Shown piece by piece: positions 9,445 through 53,729 of a stretch of DNA of 64,000 nucleotides (within the stretch, counting starts at the first letter, position 1; every line of letters begins with the position of its first letter). The notes below the pieces were generated by a model, which saw only the letters and a list, made by a program, of their open reading frames with translations, searched no databases and was not told the origin of the DNA. The translations under genes and the position numbers were made by a program. This DNA comes from Mustelus asterias (lineage: Eukaryota): contig NC_135816.1 in assembly GCF_964213995.1 (NCBI RefSeq), positions 10,974,001 to 11,038,000 on the forward strand, in the 5' to 3' direction.

Positions 9445-9606
9445 GGAAACCATCTGCCGTGTCACCGGAGGGATGAAGGTGAAGGCGGACAGAGACGAGT
9501 CCTCCCCGTATGCTGCCATGTTGGCCGCTCAGGACGTGTCTCAGAGATGCAAGGAGTTGGGCATCACCGCGCTACACATCAAACTGCGGGCCACTGGAGG
9601 CAACAG
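9445..9606 (+). CDS. RPS14: RPS14 coding exon 2
   Basis: CGCAG acceptor; [53 protein letters not shown]; donor GTCAGA; 162 nt, phase-consistent. Confidence 0.98.
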
Positions 9607-10035
9607 GTCAGAGCTTGTTCATTGTTTGAAGGGGTGCGGACATGGTGAATGTGGACATTATAATGAAAGTTGTGTGTTGCTGAAATATAAATACTGTTTT
9701 CAGTCTCGACAGGGTGTAATCTCTGGATAAAATGCTTTATTAAACCCAACTTGCAACAGAAAGTTATTTCTTTGAGGGAGCAGGAAGTTGAACATGCGAG
9801 TATTCTTTGAAGTTGGAAATAAGGTAACAGAAAATAAAGGCACTGCCAAAAACCCTCAGTTTTACAGTTGGGACTTTTCCCACAGATCTTTGCTCATCCT
9901 TAATTTTCTGTAATGATGTGACAACAGATGCAACCTAATTGCAGTTCCAAGCAGTGTTGTGTGGTGTAACGGATTCCACACTGACACCTAAGTAATCAGT
10001 ACATCAAAGATTACAGGAACTGCTCCCAGGTGAAG

Positions 10036-24329: not shown

Positions 24330-25927
24330 CGTCTCATGTCCTCCACAAGCATAAGCACCATGAGCCTAAAGGTTGTCTCCTTTCTTATCACTGAACGCTA
24401 ACTCTGGCCTGTTGTCCGTCCCCATTCTACCCGAAGAGTACTATCAATTCTGAGTCGCAACTTTACCGATCCAAGTTTCACTCCAGATGCTAGAGTCCAC
24501 AATCTAAGCTGATGCCTCTCACGCTATCGTTGAAGGAGTGCTGCATTGTTGGAGGCCCTGCCGTTTGTGTGAGGCATTGAACTGAGAGCGTGTTTACCAC
24601 CTCAGCTAGATGATAAAAGATCTCATGGTGCTATTTTGGAGAAGAGCAGGGAAGTCCTCCTCAGTGTCCTGGCCAATATTTACCCTTCAACCAACACCAC
24701 ATAAAGAAAAACAGATCATGTGGCTATTTCCTTAGAGTTTAGAAGAGTGAAGGTTGACTTTATTCAAATGGATAAGATGCCGAGGGTAGATGGTGAGATG
24801 TTTTCACTAGTGGGAGAGCCTCAAACAAGGGGACATAGCTACAAGATAAAGGGACGGTCATTTAAAACAGGTGCGCAGAAGGTGCCGAATCTCTGGAATT
24901 CTCCGCCCCAAAGGGTGGTGGAGGCTGGATCATTAGAAGTATTTAAAGTGAAGATGGGCAAATATGGCTGGCACGGTGGTTAGCACTGCTGCCTCACAGC
25001 GCCAGGGATCCGGTTCAATTCCGGCCTTGGGTCACTGTCTGTGTGGAGTCTGCACGTTCTCCCCGTGTCTGCGTGGGTTTCCTCCGGGTGCTCCGGTTTC
25101 CTCCCACAGTCCAAAGATGTGCGGGTTAGGTTGATTGGCCTTGCTAATTTGTCCCTTAGTGTCGGGGGATTAGCAGGGTAAAGATGTGGGATTATGGGGA
25201 TAGGGCCTGTGTAGGTTTGTGGTCAGTGCAGACTCGATGGGCCGAATGGCCTCCTTCTGCACTGTAGGGATTCTATGATTGTATGATTTGATAGATCGAG
25301 GAATGGAGGGCTATGGGAAAATGGTACAGAAAAGGAGCTGAGGCCGGCACAGATCAGCCTGGATGGTATTGAATGGCAGGGCAGGCCTGACGGGTCCGGT
25401 GGCCTATTCCTGCTTCTATTTCTTGTTTTCTTGTGTACCACACTGCTGTTTGTGGGATCTTACTGTGCGCAAATTGGCTGCTGCGTTTAGTCCCTCGTGC
25501 GGTGTAATTCTATGATGAGAGATTAACCCGACAACATTGGCTCAGTGCTGCAGCGCAGACTGAATGAGTTGTTGAAATCACAGAAAGCCTCTTTGAAAAT
25601 GAGTGGCTGACTTATATAGGAAAGTGCAAGCCATTAGCTGGATTTTATGGTAATTGTTTCTTGCTCTGTTGAGAACGTGTTGTCACCAGGAGAGGTCGCT
25701 GATGCCCTTCTGAATGCACACACAGCTGGAATGATAGCTCAGGCAGGTAACATGTGATTGAGGTTAATTGGAGAATCGCCCTGTTTTAAGCATTTACACA
25801 TGGGGCAGATTTAGGAAGCATTTATCCAGAGAGACAGAGAGAGAGGGAGTGTGGGTGTGCTGGGCTGCCACCAGCAGCTCCCTCAGCTTGTAACAGATCA
25901 CTCCATCACCCACAACGTAAATCTCCA

Positions 25928-26008
25928 ATTGGCTGCCTGGTGACTCACCAGTTGCCAGGGAGAGGGCTCTGCCTGAGCTTGAGTTTTTCAGAATCTATTG
26001 ACAGAAAG
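25928..26008 (-). promoter_or_regulatory. Candidate S-X1-X2-Y enhancer module M1
   Basis: Minus strand reads CCCTGGCAAC-TGG-TGAGTCA-CCAGGCAG-CCAAT. Confidence 0.6.
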
Positions 26009-28448
26009 TAAACAAAGTTCCTGCAGCTCTTTCAACCCCCCAGTCCAGAAATCTGAGTGCGAAATCCAGGCTGGCACTCTCTATGCAGCATGGAGTGTGG
26101 CACAGTGGTTAGCACTGCTGCCTCACAGCGCCAGGGACCCGGCTTGATTCCCAGCTGTCTGTGCGGAGTCTGCACGTTCTCCCCGTGGTTCCCTCCGGGC
26201 GCTCCGGTTTCCTCCCACAGTCCAAAGATGTGCAGGTTAGGTGGTCTGGCCGTGCTAAATTGCCCCTTAGTGTCAGAGGAGTTGGCCTTGTAAATGCATG
26301 GGGTTACAGGGGCTCGGGTCTGGGTGGGTCTTGGTGCAAGCTCGATGGGCCGAATGGCCTCCTTCTGCGTTTGTAATGGTTCTGAAAGATCCCAACGCCA
26401 CTGTTTCGAAAAGCGGGGGCGTTCTGTCTGTTGTCCTGTGACCTTTACCATCTAGAAGGACAAGGGCAGCAGACACACGGGGAGCACCACCAGCTGGAAG
26501 TTCCCCTCCGAGCCACTCACCATCCTGACTTGGAAATGTATCGGCCGTTCCTTCACTGTCACTGGGTCAAAATCCTGAAAATCCCTCCCCAACAGCATTG
26601 TGGGTGTACCTACACCACGTGGACTGCAGGGGTTCAAGAAGGCGGCTCACCACCAACTTCTGAAGGGGCAGTTAGGGAGGGGCAATAAATGCTGGCCTCT
26701 GCCAGTGACTCTCACGGCCCATGAAGGGAATAAAAAATCCTTTCAGCCACTATCGCTATCTGTTCATTATCCACACTGGTGTTTGTGGGATCTTGCTGTG
26801 CACAGATTGGCTGCTGCATTTCCTGCATTATAACAGTGACTGCACTTCAGAAGGTATTTCACTATAATGTGTGTTGGGAGTCTCCTAGGTGGTGGAAAGC
26901 GCTATATAAATGCACAGTCTTCATTCCCTATATCATCATTCAACAGTGATTGAAATATAAAATTCTTGCTCATTCAGGTAACACATAGACAGAGGTGTTG
27001 TGAGTTCACCACAGCAGGGGATTTGATCATCAGATGGTAATCAGCATCTTATTTCAAACACATTTTCTCCCAGTTCAATGCTCTCCTGGCCAACGTCCCA
27101 TCAACCACCATCTGTCAACTCGAGATCATTCAGAACATAGAAACCTAGAAACTAGAAGCATTGAACTGGAGGCGTTGCAGAGGAGATTCACCAGGATGCT
27201 GCCTGGGATGGAACATTGAAGTTATGAAGAGGGGTTGGATAGGCTGGGGTTGTTTTCTCTGGAGTAGAGAAGACTGAGGGGCGACCTGATCGAGGTGTAC
27301 AAGATTATGAGAGACATGGAGAGAGTGGATAAGGGGCAGCTGTTCCCCTTAGTTGAAGGGTCAGTCACAAGGGGACATAGGTTCACGGTGAGGGGCAGGA
27401 GGTTCTGGGGGGATATGAGGAAAAACCTTTTTAACCCAGAGGGTGGTGAGGGTCTGGAATGCGCTGCCTGGGAGGGTGGTGGAGGCGGGTTGCCTCACAT
27501 CCTTTAAAAAGTATCTGGATGAGCACTTGGTACCATCATAACATTCAGGGCTATGGGCCAAGTGCTGGAGGATGGTATTAGGTGGGAGTTCAGATGTTTC
27601 TAATGTGTCGGTGCAGACTCGATGGGCCGAAGAGCCTCTTCTGTGCAAAGATGTGCGGGTTAGGTTGATTGGCCAGGTTAAAAATTGTCCCTTAGAGTCC
27701 TGGGATGCATAGGTTAGAGGGATTAGCAGGTAAATATGTGGGGGTAGGGCCTGGGTGGGATTGTGGTCGGTGCAGACTCGATGGGCCGAATGGCCTCCTT
27801 CTGCACTGTCGGGCTTCTATGATTTCTATGATTTCTGCGCTCTATGATTCTATGAGTCGGCCATTCGGCCCTTCAAGCCTGCTCCACCATTCATTTTGAT
27901 CATGGCTGATCATCGAATTCAATATCCTGATTCCCCCCTTCCTCCCATATCCCTTGGTCCCTTTAGCCCCAAGAGCTATATCTAATTTCTTCTTGAAATC
28001 ACACAGCGTTTTGGCCTCAGCTACTTTCTGTGGGAGTGAATTCCACACATTCACCACCCTCCGGGCGAAGAAATTTCTCCTCACCTCAGTTCTAAAAGGT
28101 TATCCTTACCTCAAACTATGACCCTTCGTTCTGGACTCCCCCCACCATTGGGAACATTCTTTCTGAATCTACCCTGTCTAACCCTGTTAGAATTTTATAA
28201 GTTTCTATGAGATCTCCTCTCACACTCTCTCTCCTCCTTTAAGATGCTCCTGAGAGAACTTCATCTTTGAACAAGCTTTTGGTCGCCTGTCCTAATATCT
28301 GCTTATGATTGTCATCTTCATGGTCCTGGGAAGTAGACTGGGACGTGTTGGTGTGTTTAAAGACTGTCAAGTTGTTGCTTGGCTGCAACTGCAGTGCTGT
28401 CAGCTACAGGCAGATGGCACCAACATCAAATCCTTGGAGCTCCCAATG

Positions 28449-28529
28449 ATTGGCTATTGTGCAGCTCACTAGTTGCCGGGTAGAGGTCTGTGCTTGAGGT
28501 TGTGTTTTGTGGAACCAGGTGACAGAAGC
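28449..28529 (-). promoter_or_regulatory. Candidate S-X1-X2-Y module M2 (X2 degenerate)
   Basis: Plus strand reads ATTGG-CTATTGTG-CAGCTCA-CTA-GTTGCCGGGT; aligns to M1 without gaps. Confidence 0.5.
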
Positions 28530-29403
28530 TCAGCCGACATGGAATCATTGCATGGTTCCACCACAAAAGGAGGCCGTTCGGCCCATTGTGTCCAAGCCAG
28601 CTCTCTAAGAGCTACTAAACCACAGGCACATCTCCCCTACCCTCTCACCTTTTCCCCCATGGCGATGCAAAGAAACTTCTCCACAGATAGTACAAAATAT
28701 CTACTTCATTTTCCAGCTCAACAACAATCACTGCATTTGAGAGTAATTAACTGTGTTTGCTGGACTGTGGATCGTGAAAATATATTTTGATTTGATTTAT
28801 TATTGTCACATGTATTAGCATCCAGTGTAAAGTGTTGTTTCTTGCTCACTATACAGACAAAGCATACCGTTCATAGAGAACAGTAAGTAGTCTCACAACA
28901 CCAGGTTAAGGAAAGGAGAGAGTGCAGAATGCAGTGTTACAGTCACAGCTAGGGTGCGGAGAAAGACCAACTTAATGCAAGGTAGGTCCATTCAAAAGTC
29001 TGATGGCAGCAGGGGATGTGGGTGTCGCTGGCTGGGCAATGACCTCACCCCTAATTGCCCTCCATTTCAGAGGGGTATTCAGAGTCAACCACATTGCCAT
29101 GGCTCTGGAGTCACATGTAGGCCAGACCAGGTAAGGACGGCAGATTTCCTTCCCTGCAGGACAGATGGGTTTTTACGACAATCGACAGTGGTTTCATGGT
29201 TATCAGTAGACTCTTAATTCCAGAATCCCTCCATGGCTTCTCTCTGGTCTCCTCCAGCTCCACAAACATCTGAGATGTCTGTGCTCTTACAACCCTGGCC
29301 TAGTGACCACCCCCGATTCTAATTGCTGCACCACTGACGGCCATGTCTTCAGTTGCCTGGATACGAAACTCTGAAATTCCTAAATCTCTGCAACTCTCTG
29401 CAT

Positions 29404-29526
29404 GGGATTTTCCGGCTGCATTCGTCCCAAGACCGGAAAATCCTACCCGAGGTCAATGGACCTTAGCATGGTCCATGTTCCGCCTGCTACAATTCCCGCG
29501 ACGGGCGAGATGGGAAAATTCCGCCC
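29404..29526. mobile_element. Short MITE-like element. Related copies at ~45266-45393, 51768-51972 and 56989-57101
   Basis: Terminal inverted repeats GGG(CGG)ATTTTCC...GGAAAATTCCGCCC; three of the copies share an internal AGGTCAA. Confidence 0.6.
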
Positions 29527-29754
29527 TTTATCTCTCTATCCTTAGGGTGCTCCTTAAAACCTCTTTGCGCACCTTTCTAACGCTGCCCTATTTTTTTCGT
29601 TATGCTCTTGTGACGTAGATTGGGCTATGTGGTGCTAAAGATGCTATCGAGATGCGAGTTGTTGTTGTTTGGCTCTGGCTGCAGTGCCGGCAGCTACAGG
29701 CAGGTGGCACCAGCATCAAACCCTGGGCACGCAAAGCCCAAATGCTCAACACTG

Positions 29755-29835
29755 ATTGGCTGTTGTGTGACTCACTAGTTGCTGGGTAGAGGCCTCTCCT
29801 GGCAGTTGTGTTTTGCAGAATCAGGTGACAGAAAC
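29755..29835 (-). promoter_or_regulatory. Candidate X1-X2-Y module M3
   Basis: Plus strand reads CTGATTGG-CTGTTGTG-TGACTCA-CTA-GTTGCTGGGT; includes a full Y-box CTGATTGGCT. Confidence 0.6.
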
Positions 29836-32800
29836 TTAAACCAACATTCCACACAAAAGCAGAAGATGCCGAACTCTTGCTCAGAACTCTTGATCCCTCC
29901 AAGGCCTCTGATTCGTCACATTGCTTATCCAATAGGCAGACGAACATACATTTCCTCCAATTAAATACCGGGAAGACCGAAGGCAATGTTTTCAGTCCCC
30001 GCTCCCAACTCCACCCTCATAGAACCATCAAATCCCGACAGCACAGAAGAAGGCATTCGGCCCATCGAGTCTGCGCCGACTCTCTATTTTACCCAGGTCA
30101 TCGCCGCTGCCCTATCCCCACACATTTACCATGGCTAATCCTCCTAACCTACACACCTTGGGACACAATTTAGCACGGCCAATCCACCTAACCCATACAT
30201 CTTTGGACGGTGGGGGGAAACCGGAGCATCCGGAACAAACCCACGCAGACACGGGGAGAATGTGCAGACTCTGCACAGACAGTGATCTGAGACTGGAATT
30301 GAACCTGGGACCCTGGCTTTGAGAGGCAGCAGTGCTAACCCACTGTGCCACCCCAGTTTCTCCCCGGCAACTGTGCAAGCCCCACACCAAACTGTCTGCA
30401 ATATTGGTGTCATATGTGATCCCGAGATGAGATTCCGACCACATGTCTGCACCGTACTACCAACCCGACCAACCTCCAGAATACTTTACTCCTGCCTCAT
30501 CCCATCTGCCGTCAACCCTCAGCCATGCCGTTGTTATCCCTAGTAATCTTGGATTTCCACTCCATCTGACGAAGGAGCAGCGCTCCGAAAGCTAATGGTA
30601 TTTGCTACCAAATAAACCTGTTGGAATTTAATCTGGTGGTGTTAAAACTCTTACTGTGTTTACCCCAGTCCAACGCCGGCATCTCCACATCAAAAGAAAG
30701 GGCAGCATGGACAAGTTGGGCCGAAGGGCCTGTTTCCATGCTGTAAACCTCTATGACTCTATGACATCGTTGTTATCCTTAGACAGGTCTCCCACATTCT
30801 GCCCCCCACAAACCTGAGGCCAAATCTCTGCTGCCCCAGCCCTAACTCATATCAAATCCCTTCCCCCTATCACCAACCACCCCCCCCCCCCCGCCCCCCC
30901 CCGGGCTCGCTCACCTACCGTGGCCTCCGGTGAGGCAATGCCCTGATTTTAAAATTCTCATCCCTGCTTCAGACGGAGAAAATCATATTTTTATCACTCA
31001 GAGGGTTGTGCAACTTTGGAACTCTCTGCCTCGGAAGGCAGTGGAGCGTGGGGTCACTGGATATATTTAAGGCGGAGGTCGATAGATTCTTGTTTGGGAA
31101 TGAAATGTTATCAGGTGTTGGATGGGAATGTGGAATTCGAAACGTAAACTGATGAGCCATGACTGTATTGTGGGGTAGAACAGGCTCGAGGAGCCGAGTG
31201 GCTCTGATTCCGTCTGTTCATATGTGGAAAATCCTTCCATAGTCTCACCCCTCCTGATCTCTACAATTTCCCCCAGCCCTCCCACCATCTGCACTCCTCT
31301 AACTCTGGCTTCTCTCTAGTTGTTCCAGCATTGGAGGCCATGTCTACTGTTGACGAGCTTGCTTAGAACTTAACTCGTCGAGCTTAGAACGTAACTCTTT
31401 GACCAAGCTGGTCTGACCTAATTATCTCCATGTGTGAGACTCAGCAGCGTTTGTTTGGTGAAGATGCTGTGGAGTGCCTCAGGATACCAAAGGGGGCCAA
31501 GTAAATGCCAGGTTGTTGTTGTAATCGGGGCCACCTTCACTCACAGCACGGCAGTGAGCAGCATTCTGCAAGGGAAAAAATAAAACCCTTTGTGGCTAAC
31601 CGCTCTGGGACATGGATGTGAAACTTGGGAAGGAAACAAGTTCCTCTTTCAGTGTCTGAAGGCACTGACTTCGTGTTTTCCTTTCCATGGGTGGCGAACA
31701 CCTCGTGTAGCGTGGCCATATTTCATGTGTGTATCTCCGACCCGCGGTGGTGGTGGTGGGGCGAAGGGCGTGGGTTTTCAGGAACTATTCCTCTTGAGTA
31801 GGTGACACTCCATGTGGATGGAGAACATTCCATAGAAACATAGAAACTAAAAGCAGGAGTAGGATATTCGGCCCATCAAGCCCCCTCCACCTTTCATTAT
31901 GATCATGGCTGATCATTAAATTCAATATCCTGATCCCCCCCTTCCCCCCATACCCCTTGATCCCTTTAGCCCCAACAGCTATATCTAAGGGTTTCTTGAA
32001 ATCAGACAACATTTTGGCCTCAATTACATTCTGTGGTAGTGAATTCCACACATTCACCAACCTCTGGGTGAATAAATTTCTCCTCACCTCAGTTCTAAAA
32101 GGTTTACCCCCTTATCCTCAAACTATGACCCCTAGAGCTGGACACCCCCACCATTGGAAACATTCTTTCTGAATCTACCCTGTCTAACCCTGTTAGAATT
32201 TTATAAGTTTCCATGAGATTCCCTCTCACTCTTCTAAACTCCAGTGAATATAATCTTAACCGACTTAGTCACTCCTCATATGACAGACCTGCCATCCCAG
32301 GAATCAGTCTGGTAAACCTTCGCCGTTCTCCCTCTATAGCAAGGACATCCTTCTTCAGATAAGTACACCAGAACTGCACATAATACCCCAGGTGTGGCCT
32401 CACCAATATCCTATAGAATTGTAGCAAAACATCCCTATCCCGATACTCAAATCCTCTCGCTATGAAGACCAACATACCATTTGCCTTCTTTACTGCCTGC
32501 TGCACCTGCGTGCTTACTTTCAGCGACTGATAGATGAGGACTCCTGCTGTACCTCCGCACTTCCAAATCCGGAGCAATGTCCTGACCACCACCCTACTCA
32601 GCTGGTCCTTGGCTGTTCAAGAATGTGGCTCACCTTCTCAGGGCAATCAGGCTTTGGGCAACAAATGCTGGCCTTGCCAGTGATGCTCACATTACATTCA
32701 GGAATAAAGCAAAAGGAACTCGGCTGATCTTTTCTAAATCTCCAGTTCCCCCCTTCCCCCCCCCATCCCCCACCGCCCCCACCTCCCCCTACCGCTCCCC

Positions 32801-33675
32801 CCCCCCCCCCCCTAGTCTGACACCACCCTGAATAGTCATAGCAAGCTGTTTGATCTTTGTCACAAAGTTTTACAGCACAAAAAGAGGCCCTTTGGCCCAT
32901 CCTGGGAGTTCCCACCCACCCCTTCTTATTAAAGATACATTCCATCAGGTACCACAGGGGGATTTGAACCCGTGTCCTCAGAGCACTGACCTGGCCCAGT
33001 GACACTCACACTGCACCATTCTCTCTATTTAATTATAGAATCATAGAATCTCTACAGTGCCGAAGGGGTCCACTCTCCAGTAAAGTATCTTTCCCAGGCT
33101 AACACCCACCCGATCCCCATAAACCCACGCATTTCCCATGGCTAATCCCCTTAACCTACACATCTTTGGACACTAAGGGGCAATTTAGCATGGCCAATCC
33201 ACCCAGAGAAAGGAAGGAAATCATTTAAAATTCAAGCCAGGCCATTCAGAGGTGATGTCAGAGAGAACATCCTCATACGAAGGGTAATGGGAATCTGGAA
33301 CTCTCTCCCCAGCCAAGCTGTGGGAGTCCGTTTTCACGTAGACATTTCCAAACTAACTTTGGGAAGAGTTTTGTGGGGGCGGGTACTAAGGTTTGTGAAT
33401 GCAGTTAAAACTCAGATCAGCTTTAATCTAACTGTATGATGTAACAGTCTGAAAAGGGGCTGAATGGCCTCTTCCTGTTCCTATTTCTATAACCAACTAA
33501 TTCCAGGCTGTTTTACTGAATAGCAGGCAACTGAAAGGAGACAACGTCAGAGATAAGTATTGGCACAGAGCCCCGAACCCAGAGACTGACTTGTTCTTGT
33601 GTAAACTTGCTCAGTTTCACATCTGCTCTGAGACAAACCAATAATGAGGACAGGAATCCCGACGGGAGAATATCT

Positions 33676-33755
33676 ATTGGCTGCCCAGTGACTCACTAGT
33701 TGTCAGGGAAAGGTTTGCAGTTGAGCCCATGTTTTGCAGATTACTTGACAGTGAG
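33676..33755 (-). promoter_or_regulatory. Candidate S-X1-X2-Y module M4
   Basis: Plus strand reads ATTGG-CTGCCCAG-TGACTCA-CTA-GTTGTCAGGG. Confidence 0.55.
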
Positions 33756-33851
33756 CCAGAACTGCACAATGCAGATTACAGTTCAACACAGCAGGCCCAG
33801 ACGTCACTCCCATTCAAGAGTTCTTGAAATCTGAGGCTGACTATCACAATG

Positions 33852-35625
33852 CAGTACTGAGGGAGTGCTGCACTGTCAGAGGGTCAGTGCTGAGGGAGTG
33901 CTGCACTGTCAGAGGGTCAGTGCTGAGGGAGTGCTGCACTGTAAGAGGGTCAGTACTGAGGTAGTGTTGCACTGTCAGAGGGTCAGTACTGAGGGAGTGC
34001 CGCACAGTCAGAGGGTCAGTACTGAGGGAGTGCTGCACTGTCAGAGAGTCAGGACTGAGGGAGTGCTGCACTGTCAGAGGGGTAGTACTGAGGGAGTGCT
34101 GCACTGTCAGAGGGTCAGTACTGAGGGAGTGCTGCACTGTAAGAGGGTCAGTACTGAGGTAGTGTTGCACTGTCAGAGGGTCAGTACTGAGGGAGGGCTG
34201 CACTGTCAGAGAGTCAGGACTGAGGGAGTGCCGCACTGTCAGAGGGTCAGTACTGAGGGAGTGCTGCACTGTCAGAGGGTCTGTACTGAGGGAGTGCCGC
34301 ACAGTCAGAGGGTCAGTACTGAGGGAGTGCTGCACTGTCAGAGGGTCAGTACTGAGGGAGTGCTGCACTGTGAGAGGAACAGCACTGAGGGAGTGCTGCA
34401 CTGTCAGAGGGTCAGTACTGAGGGAGTGCTGCACTGTCAGAGGGCCAGTACTGAGGGAGTGCTGCACTGTCAGAGGGGCAGTACTGAAGGAGTGCTGCAC
34501 TGTCAGAGGGTCAGTACTGAGGGAGTGCTGCACTGTCAGAGGGTCAGTACTGAGGGAGTGCTGCACTGTCAGAGAGTCAGGACTGAGGGAGTGCTGCACT
34601 GTCAGACGGGTAGTACTGAGGGAATGCTGCACTGTAAGAGGGTCAGTACTGAAGGAGTGCTGCACTGTCAGAGGGTCAGTACTGAGGGAGTGCTGCACTG
34701 TCAGAGGGTCAGTACTGAGGGAGTGCTGCACTGTGAGAGGAACAGCACTGACGGAGTGCTGCACTGTCAGAGGGTCAGTACTGAGGGAGTGCTGCACTGT
34801 CAGAGGGTCAGTACTGAGGGAGTGCTGCACTGTCAGAGGGTCAGTACTGAGGGAGTGCTGCACTGTCAGAGGGGCGGTACTGAGGGAGTGCTGCACTGTC
34901 AGAGGGTCAGTACTGAGGGAGTGCTGCACTGTCAGAGGGTCAGTGCTGAGGGAGTGCTGCACTGTCAGAGGGTCAGTACTGAGGGAATGCTGCACTGTCA
35001 GAGGGTCAGTATTGAGCGAGTGCTGCACTGTCAGAGGGTCAGTACTGAGGGAGTGCTGCACTGTCAGAGGGGCAGTACTGAAGGAGTGCTGCACTGTCAG
35101 AGGGTCAGTACTGAGGGAGCAGTGCACTGTCAGAGGGTCAGTACTGAGGGAGTGCTGCACTGTCAGAGGGTCAGTACTGAGGGAGTGCCGCACTATAAGA
35201 GGGTCAGTATTGAGCGAGTGCTGCACTGTCAGAGGGGCAGTACTGAGGGAGTGCTGCACTGTCAGAGGGTCAGTACTGAGGGAGTGCCGCACTATAAGAG
35301 GGTCAGTATTGAGCGAGTGCTGCACTGTCAGAGGGGCAGTACTGAGGGAGTGCTGCACTGTCAGAGGGGCAGTACTGAGGGAGTGCTGCACTGTTAGAGG
35401 GTCAGTACTGAGGGAGTGCTGCACGGTCAGAGGGTCAGTACTGAGGGAGTGCTGCACTATAAGAGGGTCAGTATTGAGCGAGTGCTGCACTGTCAGAGGG
35501 TCAGTACTGAGGGAGTGCTGCACGGTCAGAGGGTCAGTACTGAGGGAGTGCTGCACTGTTAGAGGGTCAGTACTGAGGGAGTGCTGCACTGTTAGAGGGT
35601 CAGTACTGAGGGAGTGCTGCACTGT
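33852..35625. repeat. 33-bp minisatellite (~54 copies) expanded within a DeuSINE/SacSINE1-like element
   Basis: Unit CAGTACTGAGGGAGTGCTGCACTGTCAGAGGGT gives an 11-aa periodicity in three ORFs; SINE-like sequence resumes at 35626 (ATGAGACATTAAACTGAG). Confidence 0.92.
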
Positions 35626-36598
35626 TGGAAGCGCAGCTTTCTTTTGCATGAGACATTAAACTGAGACCCAGTCAGCTCTCTCTGGTGGATGTATGAGGCC
35701 TCATGCTATTATTTCAAAGAGTAGGGGTGGAGGGTGGGGTGTTCCCTGCACGGTTCTGGGGTCAATTCCCCCTCACCCAACATCAGCAAAATAGATTATT
35801 TGAACATTATCATATTGGCGTTTGTGGGTGGCACAGTGGTTAGCACTGCTGCCTCACAGTGCCAGGGACCCGGGTTCGATTCCCGGCCTCGGGTCACTGT
35901 CTGTGTGGAGTCTGCACATTCTCCCCGTGTCCACGTGGGTTTCCTCCGGGTGCTCCAGTTTCCTCCCACAGTCCAAAGATGTGCGGGTTAGTTGCATTGG
36001 TCTTTGTAAATGTGTGGGGTTAAAGGGATGGGAGGTATATAAATGATTGGAAGGACTGAAGGTAAGGTTACGAAATTTGCTGATGACTCAAAGATAGGTA
36101 AGTAAATTATGAAGAGGATGTAAAGTGAGTGGACAAATTGTCAATTTTGGCAGGAAGAATAAAGAGAAGGTTATTAAAGGTTATTATTATACTTTATTAG
36201 TTACAAGTAGGCTTACATTATCAATGAAATGAAGTTACTGTGAAAATTCCCTAGTTGCCTAGTTGCGCCTGTTCGGGTTACACTGAGGGAGAATTTAGCA
36301 TGGCCAATCAACCTAACCCGCACATCTTTGGACTGTGGGAGGAAACCGGAGCACCCGGAGGAAACCCACGCAGACACGGGGAAAACGTGCAGACTCCACA
36401 CAGACAGTGACCCGAGCCAGGAATTGAATCTGGGTCCCTAGCGCTGTAGGGCAGCAGTGCTAACCACTGTGCCACCGTGTTGTCCTAACTGGTGAGAGGT
36501 GACAGAGCTTGTGGTGCAGAGGGATCTGGTTGTCCTAGTGCAGATATAGCAAATAATTAGGAAAGTGAACAATGTTTATTGTGAGGGGAATTTATCAC

Positions 36599-36861
36599 TG
36601 TGGTAGCGTGGCCCCTTTAATGGACGATCCTTTGCGGGCCAACTGATGAGGCTGGAAGAAATGGAGAGGGAGCTGATGAAGCTGGCCCAATTGGGAGCGA
36701 GGGAGCACATTCCCGGGACTGGAGGCTGCATTTGGAATTGGGGCATTTTCAGGTGTAGATCTGTATCATTGTGCTGTTAAACTCTTAGTTGCACAGTTCT
36801 TCTCAGTGAATGAATCCGTTAGTGTGTTACCAGCCACATCGAGTGGCCTCAAGTTAGTACA
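36599..36861 (+). mobile_element. Possible solo LTR inserted in a CR1 fragment
   Basis: TGT...ACA-bounded 263-bp segment that interrupts otherwise collinear CR1 sequence; no clear target-site duplication. Confidence 0.4.
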
Positions 36862-38022
36862 GTTGTAAAAGCAGGGAAGTTATGCTTCAGTTTTACAGGG
36901 CTTTGGGCAGATCACATCTGGAGCATTGTGTACAATACTGTCGACTTATCAAAGGAAAGATGTAAATGTGTTAGAAACAGTTCCTGGAAGGTTTACCAGA
37001 CTAATCCCAGGAATGTGTGGGTTGTCTTATGAGGAAAGGTTGGAGCGGTTAGGTTTATATCCATTAGAGTTTAGAAGAGTAAGAGGTGACTTGATGGAAA
37101 CCTTTAAGGTCCTGAGGGTTTTGTAATAGGGTGGATGTGGAGAGGATGTTTCCCCTTGTCAGAGAATCTGGAATTAGGGGTCACTGTTTAAAAATAAGGG
37201 GTGGCCCAATTAAGACCGAGATGAGGCAAAGCTTTTTCTCTCAGAGAGTCGTGACTCACTGGAACTCTCCTCCTCCAAAGGCAGCGGAAGCAGGGCCTTT
37301 GAATATTCTTTAAGCAGAGCTAGATAGATTCTTGATTCACAATGGGGTGAAAGGTTATCAGGGGTCGGCAGGAATGTGGGGTCAAAGTTACAATCAGATC
37401 AGCCATGATCTTATAGAATGGTGGAATGGGTTTGAGGGGCCGAGTGGCCTACTCCTGATTCGTATGTTCATAGAAGCCTACAGTGCAGAAGGAGGTCATT
37501 TGACCCATCGAGTCTGTACTGACTACAATCCCACCCAGACCCTATCCCCATAACCCCATGCATGTAGCCTAGCTAGTCCCCCTGACACTAAGGGCAATTC
37601 AGGATGGCCAAGCCACCCAACCTGCGCAGCTTTGGGGTGGTGGAGCCTCTTTTGGACCAGGAACATAAGGACAGATGGAGACAGTTCTGATCCTTGACTC
37701 CCTTTGACTCCCTACTGCCTCTCAATGGTCTCCAAGTCTCAGTTCCTTCCCTTCCTTACACATTGACTAAATCCTGAGCTCAGAAACACCCATTGCACAC
37801 AGCCCTCCCTCCGCAATCCGATTAGTCAGAGCTGTGCTGGTAATCAGCAACTGGGAAGAGGCAGGAAGATCTCCGCATTGTTGTCTCCCTGTATTTCAAT
37901 CCTCGAAGGCATCTCCAAAAGCCCCGATAATTTTCTTTCAGAAAACAAACTCAGTGATATCACAATCGTGGAGGGAGTGGGGGAGGGAGAAGGATCAAAT
38001 CACAGCAGCAAAGAAATCACTG

Positions 38023-38103
38023 GTTGGTCGCCAGTGTGTGAGTCAGCAGTTACCAAGCAAAGGTTGCTGTCTGAGGCTGAGTTTTTGGAGTGTCACGTGA
38101 CAA
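38023..38103 (-). promoter_or_regulatory. Diverged S-X1-X2 module M5 (Y box degenerate)
   Basis: Plus strand reads TGAGTCA-GCA-GTTACCAAGC-AAAGGTTGCTGTC-TGAGGCTG-AGTTTTTGG, collinear with M1-M4. Confidence 0.45.
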
Positions 38104-41100
38104 TAAGCCAGCGCCAGTTCCAACAATCACAGAAGTGGCAGAGAAAGAGGCCACTGGAAGGAACAACTCACCCAGTGCCGATACCCCAGCTTTTCCCCAT
38201 AGCTCTCCACGTTCTCCCATTCAGACAACAACCTCACTGACTTTTAAAAGCTTCGATTGAACCTGCCTCCACCACACTCTCAGGCAACGCATTCCAGACC
38301 TTAACCGCTCATAGAATCATTGAATCCCTACAGTACAGAAGGAGACCATTCAGCCCATCGAGTCTGCACTGACCACAATCCCACCCAGGCCCTATTTCCA
38401 TCACCCTCATTTGCCCTGCTAATTCCCCTGACACTAGGGTCAATTTAACACGGCCAATCAAACTAACCCGCACATCTTTGCAGTGTGGGAGGAAACCGGA
38501 GCACCCGGAGGAAACCCACGCAGACACGGGGAGAACGTGCAAACTCCTCACAGACAGTGACCCGAGGCTGGAATTGAACCCGGGTCCCTGGCGCTGTGAG
38601 GCAGCAGTGCTAACCACTGTGCCACCATGCCGCCCGCCGCCCGAAAGTTTCATGTCACCGTATATCACCGTTCCTTCTTTTACTAATTACTTTCAGTCTG
38701 CGTCCTCTCGTTCTCAATCCTTTCATGAGGGGAGGCTGCAATTTCTCATTCCACAGAATGATAGAATGTTTACAGCACGGAAGGAGGCCACTCGGCCAAT
38801 TCTTTCCCTGCTGTCCCTCTGTAAGAGCGACTCACTTATTTGCACTGTGCCTTCCCCTGCCCCGTGGCCCTGCAAGTTCTGATCTCACTGGATAATGATC
38901 CCATTCTCTTTTGAAGGTTTTGATTGAATCTGTCCTCCCCCGCATTCTCAGGCAGTGGATTCCAGACCCTCAGCACCCGCTGTGTGAGTATGTTTTGCCA
39001 TCGCTTCTTTTGCCAATCGCCTCAAATTGATGTCCTCCGAGGGTGGCATGGTGGCACAGTGGTTAGCACTGCTGCTTTAACCTGTGCTTAATGCTCCCTC
39101 CACCCACATTGACTGTATCTTTAAGACCTGGTTGGCTGTAGGGATTCGCATTCTAATCAGTATTCTGTAGCTTGATTTTGTGTCTCTGTGCCCTGTTTGA
39201 GAGCAGATTTCCACTCCATCTGACGAAGGGGCAGCGCTCCGAAAGCTAATGGTATTTGCTACCAAATAAACCTGTTGGACTTTAACCTGGTGTTGTTAAA
39301 ACTCTTACTGGCCTCACAGCGCCAGAGACCCGGGTTCAATTCCAGCCTCGGGTCACTATCTGTGTGGAGTTTGCACATTCTCCCCGTGTCTACGTGGGTT
39401 TCCTCCGGGTGCTCTGGTTTCCTCCCACAGTCCAAAGATGTATGGGTTAGGTTGATTGGCCATGGTCAATTGCCCCTTAGTGTCAGGAGAATTAGTGGGG
39501 TAAATACATGGGGTTACAGGGATAGGGCCTGGGTGGGATTGTGGTTGGTGCAGGCTCGATGGGCCAAATGGCCTCCTACTGCCCTGTAGATTCTATGATT
39601 GTTTGATTCTCGACCCTTCCACCAATGGGAACAGTCTCTCCCTATCTGCTCTCTCCCGATCCCTCATTTCGAAACTTCCAGCAAATCCCCTCTTAATCTC
39701 CGCTTCTCCAAGGAGAACAGTGCCAGTCTCTTCGATCTATCCACAAGACTGAAGCTCCAAACTGATTAGGCTGCAGTTACATAGAATTCCATCAAACATA
39801 CAGCACGGGAACAGGCCATTCGGCCCAACTGGTCTGAAGAAAGACTTCCATTTATATTTGAAAATGCTCTGCAGCCGATGAGATGAAGTCACTCAGAAAT
39901 GTGGCAGCCAATTTGCGCACAGCAAGCTCCCACAAACAGTGATGTGATAATTATCGGATATTCCGCTTTTTCCTGATGTAGATTGAGGGATGAACGTTGG
40001 CCAAGACACTGGGGCGATCTCCCCTGCTCTCCTTGGAAACAGTGCCATGGGATTTTCTACGTTTACCTGAGAAGGCAGATTTCAATCTAAGCCAGTCTAT
40101 GTTCCGCATAAGCCTCCCCACAACCTGCTTTATGTAACCTTACCTACAGTATCTATATTCCGGTCTCCCTCATGTGTTTATCCAGCTTCCCCTTAAACAC
40201 ATCCATGCAACTCACCACAGCTATTCCTTCTGGTATCGAGTTCCATGTTCTAACCAATCCTGCACACAGTTTTGAGCCTTGCTTTATTAAGGAAGTACCT
40301 CAGAGCAATGGAGAGTATGCAGAAGGAATTCAACCACCAACTGCATTTACGTAGCACCTTTAACGTAGTAAAAACGTCCAAAGGTAGGTCAAAGGAGCGT
40401 TATTGATGAGAATCTCAGGAGATACTGTCAAGAGCAAAAAACTGGCCAAAGATCTTGAGGCGCATTTTAATGGAATGAGAGAGGTGAAGCGGGGAAGATT
40501 TAGAGAGAGAATTCCAGAGCTTGGGGCCTTGGGAGCTGAAGTCATAGAATCCCTCCAGTACAGGAGGAGGCCATTCAGCCCATCGGGTCTGTACCCACCA
40601 TAATCCCACCCAGATCCCTATTCCTATAAACCCACCCATTTACTCTGCTAATCCCTCTGACACTAGGGTCATCCTAACCAGCACATCTTTGGAGTGTGGC
40701 AGGAAACCGGAGCACCCGGAGGAAACCCATGCAGACACGGGGGGAACGTGCAAACTCCACGCAGGCAGTGACCCGAAGCTGGAATTGAACCCGTGTCCCT
40801 GGCGCTGTGAGGCAGCAGTGCTGACCACCGTGCCACCGAGCCACCCTTCACCTGCCTATCATGAAGTGATGGAAATCGGGGATGCTGAAGGGACCAGAGT
40901 TGGAGGAGTGCAGGGATCTCAGGCGGCTGTGGGACTGGAGGAGATTGCAGAGATAGGGAGGGGTGAGGCGAAGGAGGGATCTGAAAACAGGGGTGAGAAT
41001 ATTACAATTACAGTATTATCCGACTGAGAGCTAATACAGTCCAGCAAGCACTGGGGCTGACGGGTGAACAGAACTGGATGTAGACTGAGTTAAGGGCACC

Positions 41101-53285: not shown

Positions 53286-53460
53286 ACTGCACAGGGAAGT
53301 GGCAGCCTTGGATAATGTGCTGATGCTCCCCATCCCCCTCTGAATGAAGTGATGAGTGAAACTTGAACCCTCAAAGTATTGACTAAGAGGTGAGAGTGTT
53401 ATGTTAGATCCCTCCGGGTGCTTATATACAAGGTCGACTGATATTCAGTTCAATACGGTA

Positions 53461-53520
53461 GGGACTTTCCATGCTAGACCGTGCCAACTTCCTCTTTACT
53501 TGTGGCTGAGAGTGTTTAAA
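53461..53520 (+). promoter_or_regulatory. CD74 proximal promoter: NF-kB site, PU.1/ETS box, TATA-like element
   Basis: GGGACTTTCC at 53461-53470; AACTTCCTCTTT at 53486-53497 (reverse AAAGAGGAAGTT); TTTAAA at 53515-53520; 110-170 bp upstream of the ATG. Confidence 0.65.
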
Positions 53521-53628
53521 ACAAAACCCTTGATCAGACTGCGCACATACCTCTCTCTGGCAGCACGAGAGTGAAGTCTTCTGTGGACAGTCCAAACTGG
53601 TGGAGTTTGCTTTGACAAAGGTTCCACA

Positions 53629-53729
53629 ATGTCAGCCGATGAGCAGCAGAACGCTTTGCTGAACAATTCACAGCAAGACATTGCCAGTCATTCCAATGTG
53701 GAAGCCAGGACCACCGTTACAGGGCAGAG
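53629..53729 (+). CDS. CD74: MHC class II invariant chain, exon 1 (cytoplasmic tail)
   Basis: ACA-ATG start; MSADEQQNALLNNSQQDIASHSNVEARTTVTGQ with an acidic dileucine motif; donor AG|GTAAGA; phase 2 joins exon 2 in frame. Confidence 0.8.

What the first reader, a model, noticed from the sequence alone, without database searches (positions are those of the whole stretch)
25928..38103. Five dispersed MHC-II-type S-X1-X2-Y modules 15-28 kb upstream of shark CD74
Seen: ~80-bp co-oriented paralogous segments at 25928, 28449, 29755, 33676 and 38023, in otherwise unique DNA between transposons. They align almost without gaps as ATTGG-N8-TGACTCA-N3-GTTRYYRRGN-N13-TGAG...GTTTT...TGACA (X2 degenerate in M2, TGAG absent in M3, ATTGG absent in M5). 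On the minus strand M1 reads CCCTGGCAAC-TGG-TGAGTCA-N8-CCAAT. Known: MHC-II and CD74 are controlled by S-X1-X2-Y enhanceosomes (RFX5 complex, CREB/AP-1, NF-Y, CIITA). HLA-DRA as recalled reads CCTAGCAAC-AGA-TGCGTCA, the same 3-nt X1-X2 spacing, also after a pyrimidine tract. Distal inverted modules exist at mammalian class II loci, and I recall the mammalian CD74 Y box being inverted. An S-like CAACCTCA/CAGCCTCA lies ~15 nt 5' of X1 in M2 and M5. Motif positions look better conserved than the spacers. Inference: a duplicated distal enhancer array, or locus control region, for the invariant chain in cartilaginous fish.
Basis: partly seen in the sequence, partly recalled or inferred. Interest (0 to 1): 0.82.

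Follow-up and report, generated by a model that had tools for sequence, protein, structure and literature searches.

The report
Five SXY-like modules upstream of CD74
Five old, same-direction copies of a roughly 90-base DNA element that resembles, but does not fully match, the control switch of MHC class II genes lie 15-28 kb upstream of a shark's invariant-chain gene; they may be distal enhancers, but this is unproven.

Summary
Five co-oriented modules of 84-90 bp lie at 25923-26008, 28444-28529, 29750-29835, 33672-33755 and 38018-38107 (profile E 7.5e-19 to 2.1e-24, no sixth copy).

- **Islands:** the modules are 60-82% identical with 0-5 gap columns. Their flanks do not align, except M2/M3 and weakly M1.
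- **Low copy:** in contigs of the same species, module positions carry the locus contig plus little more at >=80% likeness. Neighbouring transposons reach 1e5-1e7. Orthologous copies exist in three related organisms.
- **For SXY:** the minus strand reads pyrimidine tract, X1, 3 nt, TGASTCA, 8 nt, CCAAT. M1 and M3 are the two best window matches to a printed X1-X2 probe.
- **Against SXY:** the NF-Y site is flipped and about 10 bp too close. No S box could be shown. 18 of 29 invariant columns lie outside the three motifs. Related species show no deficit of changes inside the modules.

My reading is a locally amplified RFX/bZIP/NF-Y cis-regulatory module that is SXY-like but not proven SXY. The link to CD74 and CIITA rests on position only. 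The genome-wide scan and distant orthologues could not be tested.

The parts
25923..26008 (+). Module M1. On the + strand: ATTGG 25928-25932 (part of the palindromic CCAATTGG at 25925-25932), TGACTCA 25941-25947, GTTGCCAGGGAGAGG from 25951, then TGAG, GTTTT and TGACAG. It is the copy nearest the family consensus.
   Evidence: (E 2.1e-24). It gives the best window match (15/19) to the printed X1-X2 probe core. An orthologous contig spans it in 3 of 3 other organisms (records 25, 9, 17).
28444..28529 (+). Module M2. ATTGG is at 28449-28453, preceded by CCAAT to give CCAATGATTGG. The TRE position reads GCAGCTCA in this species. GTTGCCGGGTAGAGG starts at 28472.
   Evidence: (E 1.5e-22). At 28462-28464 the window has CAG, while organisms B and D have TGA, which gives an intact TGACTCA (table 3). 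Contigs span it in 2 of 3 other organisms; none is listed for X13.
29750..29835 (+). Module M3. CTGATTGGCT includes ATTGG at 29755-29759, TGACTCA is at 29768-29774, and GTTGCTGGGTAGAGG starts at 29778. TGAG is replaced by TGGCAG.
   Evidence: E 3e-24; 14/19. At 29829 a C>T change in organisms B, C and D alters the otherwise invariant TGACA.
33672..33755 (+). Module M4. ATTGG is at 33676-33680, TGACTCA at 33689-33695, and the RFX half-site is weakened to GTTGTCAGGGAAAGG. It has a 1-nt deletion in the second half.
   Evidence: E 8.1e-21; 13/19.
38018..38107 (+). Module M5, the most diverged copy. GTTGG replaces ATTGG (38023-38027), a 3-nt insertion makes the Y-X2 gap 11 nt, and TGAGTCA is at 38039-38045. 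GTTACCAAGCAAA is the most complete palindromic X-box of the five (10 of 11 specified positions).
   Evidence: (E 7.5e-19).
28226..28443 (+). Left flank of M2, paralogous to the left flank of M3 (29531-29749). It shows that M2/M3 arose by segmental duplication of at least 300 bp, not by insertion of the module alone. M1 shares about 50-95 bp of this flank weakly (25841-25922, z 2.2-4.4).
   Evidence: z 29.6; 58/76 identical; score 61.5, z 32.6.
29531..29749 (+). Left flank of M3, paralogous to 28226-28443.
53375..53628 (+). CD74 proximal promoter and 5' UTR, bounded upstream by a transposon ORF that ends at 53374. It has a TATA-like TTATATAC near 53421, GGGACTTTCC at 53461-53470 and an ETS-like AACTTCCTCTTT near 53485. 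No SXY arrangement was found here.
   Evidence: Read directly. The scans give no hit here. The motif names are from recall.
53629..53729 (+). CD74 exon 1 coding part (MSADEQQNALLNNSQQD...), followed by the donor GTAAGA.
   Evidence: Its N-terminus resembles that of the 325-aa relative P0001.
62979..63131 (+). CD74 exon 2 (transmembrane segment).
   Evidence: A phmmer search of this exon alone finds 3 proteins; the best is P0001, 325 aa, E 3e-12, 72% identity.
7494..9630 (+). RPS14 coding exons seen on the + strand ([14 protein letters not shown]... from 7494; ...[25 protein letters not shown]... within 9170-9730). RPS14 therefore lies upstream of CD74 and points the same way, and the modules lie in the roughly 41-kb RPS14-CD74 intergenic region.

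Best explanation
The five segments descend, by local segmental duplication, from one compact composite cis-regulatory module that has been kept while the DNA around it decayed and filled with transposons.

Read on the minus strand, each copy carries a pyrimidine tract and an RFX-type X-box half-site. Exactly 3 nt further on is an AP-1/CREB-type TGASTCA site. Eight nt after that is a CCAAT box with typical NF-Y flanks (AGCCAATCAG in M3). On the other side of the X box lies a second, equally conserved half (A-AGG, CTCA, AAAAC, TGTCA on the minus strand) whose binding factors are unknown.

The most likely mechanism is cooperative binding of an RFX complex, a bZIP dimer and NF-Y on one face of the helix. 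In antigen-presenting cells this platform would recruit a co-activator of the CIITA type and act as a redundant array of distal enhancers on CD74, 15.5-27.6 kb downstream.

It is SXY-like rather than canonical SXY. The X1-X2 core matches, but NF-Y is flipped and sits about one helical turn (10 bp) closer.

**Shown:** the paralogy, co-orientation, low copy number, module-limited and almost indel-free conservation, the motif arrangement, and orthologues in three related organisms.

**Inferred:** any protein binding, CIITA dependence, enhancer activity, and CD74 as the target.
For: 1. **Real and specific.** Five profile hits at E <= 7.5e-19, all on the + strand, with the next hit at E 1.2.
2. **Island pattern.** Modules are 60-82% identical with 0-5 gap columns over about 83 columns. 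Flanks are 23-52% identical with 11-26 gap columns, except M2-M3. M2/M3 share at least 210 bp more, so copies arose by segmental duplication, and only the module stays recognisable in the older copies.
3. **Not a young or high-copy repeat.** In contigs of the same species (run X1), 6 of 10 listed positions inside modules carry only the locus contig (depth 13.3-16.2) and 4 of 10 carry 7-18 more. Transposon bins reach 1e5 to 1.6e7. No target-site duplication or terminal inverted repeat exceeds the shuffle range.
4. **X region as in SXY.** Pyrimidine tract 7-8 of 8 in 5 of 5, and X1-3 nt-TRE exact in 4 of 5. The fifth (M2) is intact in organisms B and D. M1 and M3 are the top two of about 128,000 window positions against the printed X1-X2 probe core. 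A pyrimidine-rich stretch 5' of X is a stated feature of S-Y motifs (passage of PMC2278383).
5. **Motif columns.** They are better conserved than the rest (8.0 against 6.2, p 0.0035).
6. **Context.** The modules lie between RPS14 and CD74. No canonical X1-X2-Y arrangement exists elsewhere in the window, including the CD74 promoter and intron 1.
7. **Mammalian precedent.** Mouse Cd74 has an upstream MHCII-like enhancer plus two intronic enhancers that bind CIITA (passages of PMC2883540). S-Y modules work in either orientation (passages of PMC1802633).
8. **Phasing.** The X-to-Y distance is about 10 bp shorter than my count for HLA-DRA. That HLA-DRA count rests on recall. Integral helical turns are the stated periodicity of CIITA-regulated XY boxes (passage of PMC4381081).
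Against: - The family-defining orientation and spacing of Y are not met. The MHC Y box is an inverted CCAAT (abstract of PMC2191494), placed 20-22 bp from X in mouse class I modules (PMC4374748), with total XY length 46-50 bp in CIITA-regulated genes (PMC4381081). Here CCAAT is on the X1 strand and 8 nt from X2.
- No S box could be established.
- 18 of 29 invariant columns lie outside Y, X2 and X1, and the best-conserved blocks (GTTTT 10.0, TGACA 9.3) are unexplained.
- By my own binomial arithmetic, a match of >=14/19 to the probe core is expected about 1.5 times per window by chance. The match level alone is therefore weak; only its coincidence with the conserved modules carries weight.
- In the between-species rows shown, modules carry 7 events in 258 bp and unique flanks carry 14 in 1035 bp (odds ratio 2.0, p 0.16). 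That is no sign of recent constraint. Two events hit core motifs: the TRE of M2 in this species, and TGACA of M3 in B, C and D. Only 40 of 712 rows were shown, so this test is weak.
- M5 has lost ATTGG and changed the spacing, and M2 has lost its TRE.
- There is no RNA, chromatin or binding evidence: 0 of 23 listed runs are on record as RNA.
- Copies less than 80% alike elsewhere in the genome would not have been seen.
Confidence: 0.4

Rival explanations
1. A functional cis-regulatory module (enhancer or cryptic promoter) that uses general RFX (RFX1-3/7), AP-1 and NF-Y factors and is unrelated to the CIITA enhanceosome. It may serve RPS14, an unannotated non-coding transcript or a more distant gene.
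For: - The Y orientation and spacing are non-canonical (against passages).
- M5 carries a near-complete palindromic X-box (10 of 11 specified positions), and the others score 8-9 of 11. That suits RFX dimers in general.
- X2 is a pure TRE, not a CRE, in 4 of 5.
- Half of the conserved columns lie outside the SXY motifs.
- NF-Y co-occurs genome-wide with FOS and RFX5 outside MHC genes (passages of PMC4889920).
Against: - The 3-nt X1-X2 juxtaposition with a 5' pyrimidine tract is the specific signature of the MHC X box.
- The nearest tissue-specific gene is CD74, a classic CIITA target (passages).
- The window holds no other SXY candidate for CD74.
Confidence: 0.25
2. Neutral relics. These are fragments of an ancient transposon or LTR, or of a local duplication, whose motif content is chance or inherited from a viral enhancer. 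They look like islands only because transposon insertions and deletions removed the flanks, or because gene conversion kept the cores alike.
For: - AP-1 and CCAAT at fixed spacing are reported in human LTR repeats (passage of PMC4889920).
- Transposon sequence begins 9 to about 170 bp to the right of every module.
- The right edge of homology is sharp while the left edge varies, as in 5'-truncated retroposed copies.
- There is no deficit of between-species changes in modules.
- M2 and M5 have lost motifs.
- Copies below 80% likeness elsewhere would have escaped.
- No repeat library (Dfam) was on hand.
Against: - All five copies are clustered in 12.2 kb and co-oriented (2 in 32 by chance), with none in the other 52 kb, although real transposon families here have 8-53 copies in 25 kb.
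- There is at most about one extra contig at >=80% likeness.
- No target-site duplication or terminal inverted repeat was found.
- M2/M3 were copied with at least 210 bp of flank.
- Modules retain 60-72% identity without indels where flanks are unalignable. This is hard to obtain neutrally.
Confidence: 0.2
3. Promoter remnants of lost minus-strand genes. Read S-X-Y on the minus strand, each module would drive transcription leftwards, into the flank that M1-M3 still share. The array would then be what remains of tandem MHC-like or other CIITA-regulated gene copies whose bodies have decayed.
For: - Proximal S-Y modules typically lie within about 300 bp of the start site (passage of PMC4243378).
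- The only extra conserved flank lies on the side that would be downstream on the minus strand.
- Unchecked first-reader notes list many MHC genes and pseudogenes with X-Y promoters in this genome.
Against: - No conserved open frame exists in that flank. By my reading, M2 has ATG followed by a stop after 8 codons, M1 has a stop after 2, and M3 is open.
- I read by eye the 73 (of 161) open frames of >=45 codons that lie mostly in non-repeated DNA between 24.3 and 39.1 kb. None looked like an Ig or MHC exon, and several look like retroelement tails. None was sent to Pfam.
- The spacing of 1.3 kb between M2 and M3 leaves no room for a gene.
Confidence: 0.1
4. A cluster of small structured RNA genes (snoRNA, miRNA or similar).
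For: The islands are co-oriented, about 90 nt long and spaced by kilobases. The neighbouring RPS14 is noted as a snoRNA host.
Against: - There are 0 Rfam matches at gathering score in the whole window.
- The consensus fold is only -8.74 kcal/mol for about 100 nt, with a covariation term of -0.96.
- The conserved blocks are transcription-factor-like motifs.
Confidence: 0.02

Closest known systems
MHC class II / CD74 S-X-X2-Y (SXY, S-Y) enhanceosome module bound by RFX5-RFXAP-RFXANK, CREB/ATF1 and NF-Y, which recruits CIITA
   Same: It has a pyrimidine tract, an RFX half-site, a 3-nt spacer and a CRE/TRE-like heptamer, with a CCAAT-family box on the far side of X2. It is compact, and its spacing is fixed without indels in 4 of 5 copies. 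It lies next to CD74, a classic target.
   Different: The CCAAT box has the opposite orientation and lies 8 nt from X2, not about 18-22 nt, so the XY unit is about 10 bp shorter than the 46-50 bp of CIITA-regulated genes. X2 is a pure AP-1 site. No S box was identified. A second conserved half (GTTTT, TGACA) has no counterpart. The modules are 15-28 kb from the gene, not within 300 bp.
Distal S-Y / X-box-like enhancers of the human MHC class II locus and the Ii gene (Krawczyk et al. 2004 and Gomez et al. 2005, seen only as citations), and the mouse Cd74 upstream and two intronic enhancers
   Same: There are several dispersed MHCII-like modules per locus that act at a distance and in either orientation. 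The CD74 locus itself has more than one in mammals (passages of PMC1802633, PMC4243378 and PMC2883540).
   Different: In mammals the extra CD74 modules are promoter-proximal or in intron 1. Here all five lie far upstream, and none was found in the promoter or intron 1. Here the five are paralogues of each other. The papers that define the mammalian elements were not available to read.
General RFX X-box (palindromic GTNRCC-N-RGYAAC; consensus from recall)
   Same: The first half-site fits in 3 of 5, with one mismatch each in M3 and M4. M5 matches 10 of 11 specified positions, and the others 8-9 of 11.
   Different: The second half-site is weak in M1-M4, as in the MHC X1 box. The fixed adjoining TRE is not a feature of ciliary-type X-boxes (from recall).
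NF-Y/FOS composite sites with fixed AP-1-CCAAT spacing in human LTR repeats
   Same: A CCAAT box and an AP-1 site at fixed short spacing, carried by repeated DNA (passage of PMC4889920).
   Different: Here there is no LTR hallmark, no dispersed family at >=80% likeness, and all copies are local and co-oriented, with an added X-box. The spacing in the human LTRs was not given in the passages I saw.

Membership tests
MHC SXY (S-X1-X2-Y) enhanceosome module | X1: RFX-complex half-site preceded by a pyrimidine-rich stretch | tested here: met
   The pyrimidine tract has 7-8 of 8 pyrimidines in 5 of 5. GTT[GA]C[CT] is present in 4 of 5, and M4 has one mismatch (GTTGTC). The feature is stated in a passage of PMC2278383.
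MHC SXY (S-X1-X2-Y) enhanceosome module | X2: CRE/TRE-like heptamer immediately 3' of X1 (3 nt in the printed HLA-DRA probe) | tested here: met
   TGASTCA lies exactly 3 nt from X1 in 4 of 5. M2 is degenerate in this species but intact in organisms B and D. The 19-mer match is 15, 14 and 13 of 19 for M1, M3 and M4, and M1 and M3 are the best two in the window.
MHC SXY (S-X1-X2-Y) enhanceosome module | Y: inverted CCAAT (ATTGG on the X1 strand) at a fixed distance beyond X (20-22 bp in mouse class I modules; XY length 46-50 bp in CIITA-regulated genes) | tested here: not met
   CCAAT, not ATTGG, lies on the X1 strand. It is 8 nt from X2 in 4 of 5 and 11 nt in M5, where it has degenerated to CCAAC. 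M1 and M2 also have an ATTGG 11 and 14 nt from X2 because of back-to-back boxes. The definition comes from the abstract of PMC2191494 and passages of PMC4374748, PMC4381081 and PMC1802633.
MHC SXY (S-X1-X2-Y) enhanceosome module | S (W) box about 16 bp 5' of the X box | tested here: inconclusive
   On the minus strand, conserved blocks (CTCA in 4 of 5; AAAAC in 5 of 5) lie in the expected region. I had no printed S consensus to score them against. The logos are in figures and supplements that I could not see.
MHC SXY (S-X1-X2-Y) enhanceosome module | Occupancy by RFX5/RFXAP/RFXANK, CREB and NF-Y, and recruitment of CIITA (or NLRC5), with activity lost in their absence | not testable with these tools
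   No chromatin or RNA data are available: 0 of 23 listed runs are on record as RNA.
MHC SXY (S-X1-X2-Y) enhanceosome module | The same profile recurs at MHC-II, MHC-I, B2M and related promoters of the same genome | not tested
No tool scans this genome. Unchecked first-reader notes report DRA-like X-Y modules at class II and class I gene starts elsewhere in it.
Interspersed repeat (transposon, SINE, solo LTR) | Many dispersed copies in the genome | tested here: not met
   Module bins have depth 42-61, against 13-16 for the single locus contig and 1e5 to 1.6e7 for transposon bins, at >=80% likeness. There are no other copies in the 64-kb window. Copies below 80% likeness would be missed.
Interspersed repeat (transposon, SINE, solo LTR) | Target-site duplications or terminal inverted repeats; match to a repeat library | tested here: inconclusive
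   No flanking direct or inverted repeat exceeds the shuffle range in 5 of 5. No Dfam or RepeatMasker library was available.
Structured non-coding RNA gene cluster | A conserved fold with covariation, or an Rfam match | tested here: not met
   There are 0 Rfam matches. The consensus fold is -8.74 kcal/mol with covariation -0.96.

The most novel reading that the evidence does not exclude
Cartilaginous fish control the invariant chain through a 12-kb array of five duplicated distal enhancers, a shark CD74 locus control region. The array is built on an alternative geometry of the MHC enhanceosome: the canonical X1-X2 core is kept, but NF-Y is flipped and one helical turn closer, X2 is an AP-1 site, and there is an extra conserved GTTTT...TGACA half. 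That would mean the strict S-X-Y architecture of tetrapods is only one of at least two workable solutions present early in jawed vertebrates.
Probability: 0.2. Interest if true: 0.75.

Novelty: new variant of a known kind. Interest (0 to 1): 0.5.

Why it matters
CD74 and the MHC class II genes are the textbook case of a dedicated enhanceosome whose order, orientation and spacing are described as strictly conserved. Almost all of that evidence comes from mammals. My three literature searches found no paper on SXY modules of shark class II or CD74 genes.

If these modules bind RFX5, NF-Y and CIITA, three things follow:
- They would show how flexible the platform was near the origin of adaptive immunity.
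- They would give a natural experiment on Y-box orientation and helical phasing.
- They would be an example of enhancer redundancy created by local duplication in a transposon-rich genome.

If they do not bind these factors, they are still a clean example of a small constrained non-coding element surviving as islands. That would be of modest interest.

Tried and rejected
1. **Structured RNA.** Rfam at gathering score gave 0 matches over the whole window. RNAalifold gave -8.74 kcal/mol. Rejected.
2. **Young or high-copy transposon.** Rejected on contig depth, on the absence of other window copies, and on the absence of target-site duplications or inverted repeats. An old, diverged family is not excluded.
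3. **Coding exons or a gene family beside the modules.** I read open frames of >=45 codons between 24.3 and 39.1 kb by eye (73 of 161 lie mostly in non-repeated DNA). There is no conserved frame in the shared left flank. None was sent to Pfam. Set aside.
4. **A canonical SXY elsewhere in the window.**
   - The strict scan (X1, N2-4, X2 within one mismatch) gave 7 hits. Three are M1, M3 and M5. None of the other four has a CCAAT or ATTGG within 40 nt.
   - The loose scan (X1, N24-33, ATTGG) gave 5 hits against 1.27 +/- 1.10 expected. One is M2, and none lies in the CD74 promoter or intron 1.
   - The weak profile hit at 53522-53564 (E 1.2) is noise.
5. **Reading the module in the + orientation** (Y first, looking for X upstream in the M2/M3 left flank). 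I found no X1-X2 at a sensible distance by eye. Rejected.
7. **Other copies in public metagenome contigs.** A degenerate pattern gave 0 matches, which is uninformative.
8. **Earlier notes of the scan.** Look-ups by words gave titles only.
9. **Expression.** 0 of 23 listed runs are on record as RNA. Not tested.
The paper that would settle it (PMC360901) is not held. The search gave only the abstract statement that Ii has a Y element.
11. **Supplementary files.** I did not ask for any. The S-X and X-Y spacing figures and motif alignments of PMC4374748, PMC4381081 and PMC2278383 are in figures and supplements that I did not see. They may bear on how far an 8-nt X2-Y gap lies outside the known range.

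Full report
**What is there.**

CD74 is also on the + strand. Its exon 1 ATG is at 53629 with a donor after 53729, and exon 2 is at 62979-63131. Exon 2 searched alone finds a 325-aa relative whose N-terminus resembles exon 1.

The five claimed segments lie in the roughly 41-kb interval between the two genes.
- M2 has a degenerate TRE.
- M3 lacks TGAG.
- M5 has GTTGG.

A profile HMM built from the five finds exactly these five, all on the + strand:

| Module | Coordinates | E-value |
|---|---|---|
| M1 | 25923-26008 | 2.1e-24 |
| M2 | 28444-28529 | 1.5e-22 |
| M3 | 29750-29835 | 3e-24 |
| M4 | 33672-33755 | 8.1e-21 |
| M5 | 38018-38107 | 7.5e-19 |

The next hit has E 1.2.

**Islands, not blocks.**

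Pairwise identity inside the module is 60-82%, with 0-5 gap columns in about 83 columns. In the same alignment the left flank is 23-52% identical with 11-26 gap columns. The exception is M2-M3, at 76% with no gaps.

Local-alignment z-scores against shuffles are as follows:
- Modules: 7.5-40.8.
- Flanks: near zero.
- M2-M3 left flank: z about 30, homology reaching 28226-28437 against 29531-29727.
- M1 against M2/M3 left flank: z 2.2-4.4, about 50-95 bp.

The other right-flank matches are transposon copies at different offsets.

M2/M3 were therefore copied as a segment of at least 300 bp. In the older copies only the 84-90-bp core remains recognisable, and it has kept its internal spacing. Under local duplication this pattern needs long-term constraint on the core, which is an inference. 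The alternatives are short-tract gene conversion or a mobile unit with a fixed right end.

**Not a common repeat.**

I laid Logan contigs of four runs on 25300-30300 at >=80% likeness. The runs were X1 (organism A, presumably the source species) and X6, X13 and X14 (organisms B, C and D).

In X1 the bins that hold M1, M2 and M3 have summed depth 42.1, 56.1 and 60.8. The single contigs that span them have depth 13.3, 16.2 and 13.3. Transposon bins reach 1e5 to 1.6e7.

At 6 of the 10 listed positions inside modules, the total depth equals the locus contig alone. At 4 of 10 it is 7-18 higher, about one more contig. Cross-laying of another paralogue's contig could account for it.

Two caveats apply. 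Contig depth is a crude measure.

No flanking direct or inverted repeat exceeds the shuffle range. All five copies are co-oriented and lie within 12.2 kb. Real transposon families here have 8-53 copies in 25 kb.

**Relatives.**

Contigs of organisms B, C and D span the three modules with unique flanks (table 8):
- M1 in 3 of 3.
- M2 in 2 of 3 (none listed for X13).
- M3 in 3 of 3.

The differences are 16-61 letters per 240-790 bp, roughly 91-96% identity. The modules are therefore orthologous single-locus features in at least four related organisms.

Two differences are instructive:
- At 28462-28464 the window and X1 have CAG, but B and D have TGA. This restores TGACTCA, so the TRE of M2 is ancestral and was lost in this species.
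- At 29829 a C>T change in B, C and D alters the otherwise invariant TGACA of M3.

I counted the rows shown for unique stretches. Modules carry 7 events in 258 bp and flanks carry 14 in 1035 bp (odds ratio 2.0, p 0.16). That is no sign of recent constraint. However, only 40 of 712 rows were shown, and those appear to favour differences shared by several runs. The test is therefore weak.

**Anatomy.**

On the minus strand each module reads as follows:
- A pyrimidine tract, 7-8 of 8 pyrimidines in 5 of 5.
- An RFX-type half-site: TGGCAAC, CGGCAAC, CAGCAAC, TGACAAC or TGGTAAC.
- 3 nt.
- TGAGTCA or TGACTCA, exact in 4 of 5.
- 8 nt (11 in M5).
- CCAAT with typical NF-Y flanks, AGCCAATCAG in M3. It has degenerated to CCAAC in M5.

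Against the X1-X2 core of a gel-shift probe printed in PMC4806502 (passage seen), M1 matches 15/19 and M3 matches 14/19. These are the two best of about 128,000 window positions. M4 ties with three unrelated sites at 13/19.

By my own binomial arithmetic, about 1.5 sites of >=14/19 are expected per window. The match level alone is therefore unremarkable. What is unlikely (about 0.002 by the same arithmetic) is that a given 86-bp conserved element contains one.

Motif columns (ATTGG, TGACTCA, GTTGCCAGG) are better conserved than the rest: 8.0 against 6.2, p 0.0035. But 18 of 29 invariant columns lie outside them. GTTTT (10.0), TGACA (9.3) and A-AGG (8.8) are at least as conserved.

**Comparison with the SXY family.**

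From passages I read:
[quoted passage not shown] PMC2278383 says likewise and notes a pyrimidine-rich region 5' of X.
- It spans 59-68 bp and is typically within 300 bp of the start site, with distal modules also known (PMC4243378).
- CIITA-regulated genes have XY boxes of 46-50 bp, CD74 has 48 bp, and the periodicity corresponds to whole helical turns (PMC4381081).
- S and Y lie 16 and 20-22 bp from X in mouse class I modules (PMC4374748).
- The Y element contains an inverted CCAAT box, and Ii has a Y element (abstract of PMC2191494).

Measured against this, the shark modules compare as follows:
- They meet the pyrimidine-tract, X1 and X2 features.
- They fail the Y orientation and distance. 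The CCAAT box is flipped. By my count it lies about 10 bp, one helical turn, closer than in HLA-DRA. That HLA-DRA count rests on recall.
- The S box is undecided.

They therefore should not be filed as SXY modules. They may still work like one.

S-Y modules act in both orientations (PMC1802633). The mouse Cd74 locus has an upstream MHCII-like enhancer and two intronic enhancers that bind CIITA (PMC2883540). Several modules at this locus would therefore not be new in kind.

A relevant rival comes from PMC4889920. There, AP-1 and CCAAT at fixed spacing are reported in human LTR repeats, and RFX5 and FOS often sit on NF-Y sites outside MHC genes.

**Context that favours a link with CD74.**

The proximal promoter is only about 255 bp of non-transposon DNA (53375-53628). 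By my reading, with motif names from recall, it has a TATA-like box, GGGACTTTCC and an ETS-like site, but no X-Y arrangement.

Neither the strict nor the loose scan finds a canonical arrangement anywhere else in the window, including the 9.2-kb intron 1. The five modules are the only X1-X2-type elements within reach of CD74 in this window.

This is circumstantial. RPS14 is equally near, and sequence beyond the window was not seen.

**Other readings tested.**
- No Rfam family and no convincing consensus fold.
- No conserved open frame in the shared flank, and no Ig- or MHC-like frame by eye among the open frames of the interval (not sent to Pfam).
- No match in public metagenome contigs (uninformative).
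- No look-alike in the scan's own notes (uninformative).
- Searches of the paper library found no report on shark CD74 or class II regulatory modules.

**Verdict.**

| Question | Verdict |
|---|---|
| Observation | Confirmed |
| Novelty | New variant of a known kind |
| Interest | About 0.5 |

The best reading (confidence 0.4) is a locally amplified, historically constrained composite RFX/bZIP/NF-Y module. It is SXY-like in its X half and non-canonical in its Y half, and it probably serves as redundant distal enhancers of CD74.

The rivals are:
- A CIITA-independent regulatory module (0.25).
- A neutral relic, or a transposon- or LTR-derived fragment (0.2).
- Promoter remnants of lost minus-strand genes (0.1).
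- An RNA gene cluster (0.02).

The finding is specific and testable, and it touches the early evolution of the MHC enhanceosome. It rests on sequence alone, one defining feature fails, and the decisive genome-wide and cross-species tests could not be run here.

Noticed in passing
window 33720-35700 (approx.): A tandem array with a 33-bp period begins within about 60 bp of the right end of M4. It has at least 53 overlapping register positions at 91-95% identity in its body. Similar sequence lies about 30 bp to the right of M1 (26039-26175 against 33809-33939, z 7.1), so it is probably part of a repeat family.
   Followed up: no
window 53375-53628: The CD74 proximal promoter is squeezed to about 255 bp by a transposon ORF that ends at 53374. 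It holds a TATA-like TTATATAC (about 53421), GGGACTTTCC (53461-53470, NF-kB-like) and AACTTCCTCTTT (about 53485, ETS/PU.1-like on the other strand). It has no X-Y arrangement. The motif names are from recall.
   Followed up: partly
window 28462-28464: There is a three-letter difference between species. The window and run X1 have CAG, while organisms B and D have TGA. This removes the AP-1 site of M2 in this species only.
   Followed up: partly
window 26097-26300 and 27638-27824: Very high-copy elements (summed contig depth 9e6 to 1.6e7) have sharp ends at 26097 and 27809-27824, marked by thousands of loose ends. The SINE-like unit starting at 26097 has a tRNA-like start. It can serve as a ready internal copy-number standard for this genome.
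   Followed up: no
window 33526-33575 (+): About 150 bp upstream of M4, in the same direction as CD74, the sequence reads GGCAAC, 12 nt, ACGTCA, 9 nt, ATTGG. This is X-, CRE- and Y-like, but the spacing is wrong. It is one of 5 loose hits against 1.27 expected.
   Followed up: no
window 37767-38237 (+): A 157-codon stop-free frame in non-repeated DNA spans M5. By my arithmetic about three frames of this length are expected by chance in a window, so it is probably meaningless. It was not searched.
   Followed up: no
other pieces of the same genome (earlier notes): Unchecked first-reader notes report DRA-like X-Y modules at a class II promoter with ten extra Y boxes (s1-892851), a tandemly doubled SXY module at a class I promoter (s1-893504), and X-Y promoter modules at other MHC gene starts (s1-891896, s1-893594). 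These would be the natural comparison set for the modules described here.
   Followed up: no
window 44600-53400: The 9 kb directly upstream of the CD74 promoter is dense with retroelement-like open frames on both strands. Transposon insertion could therefore account for much of the present distance between the modules and CD74.
   Followed up: no
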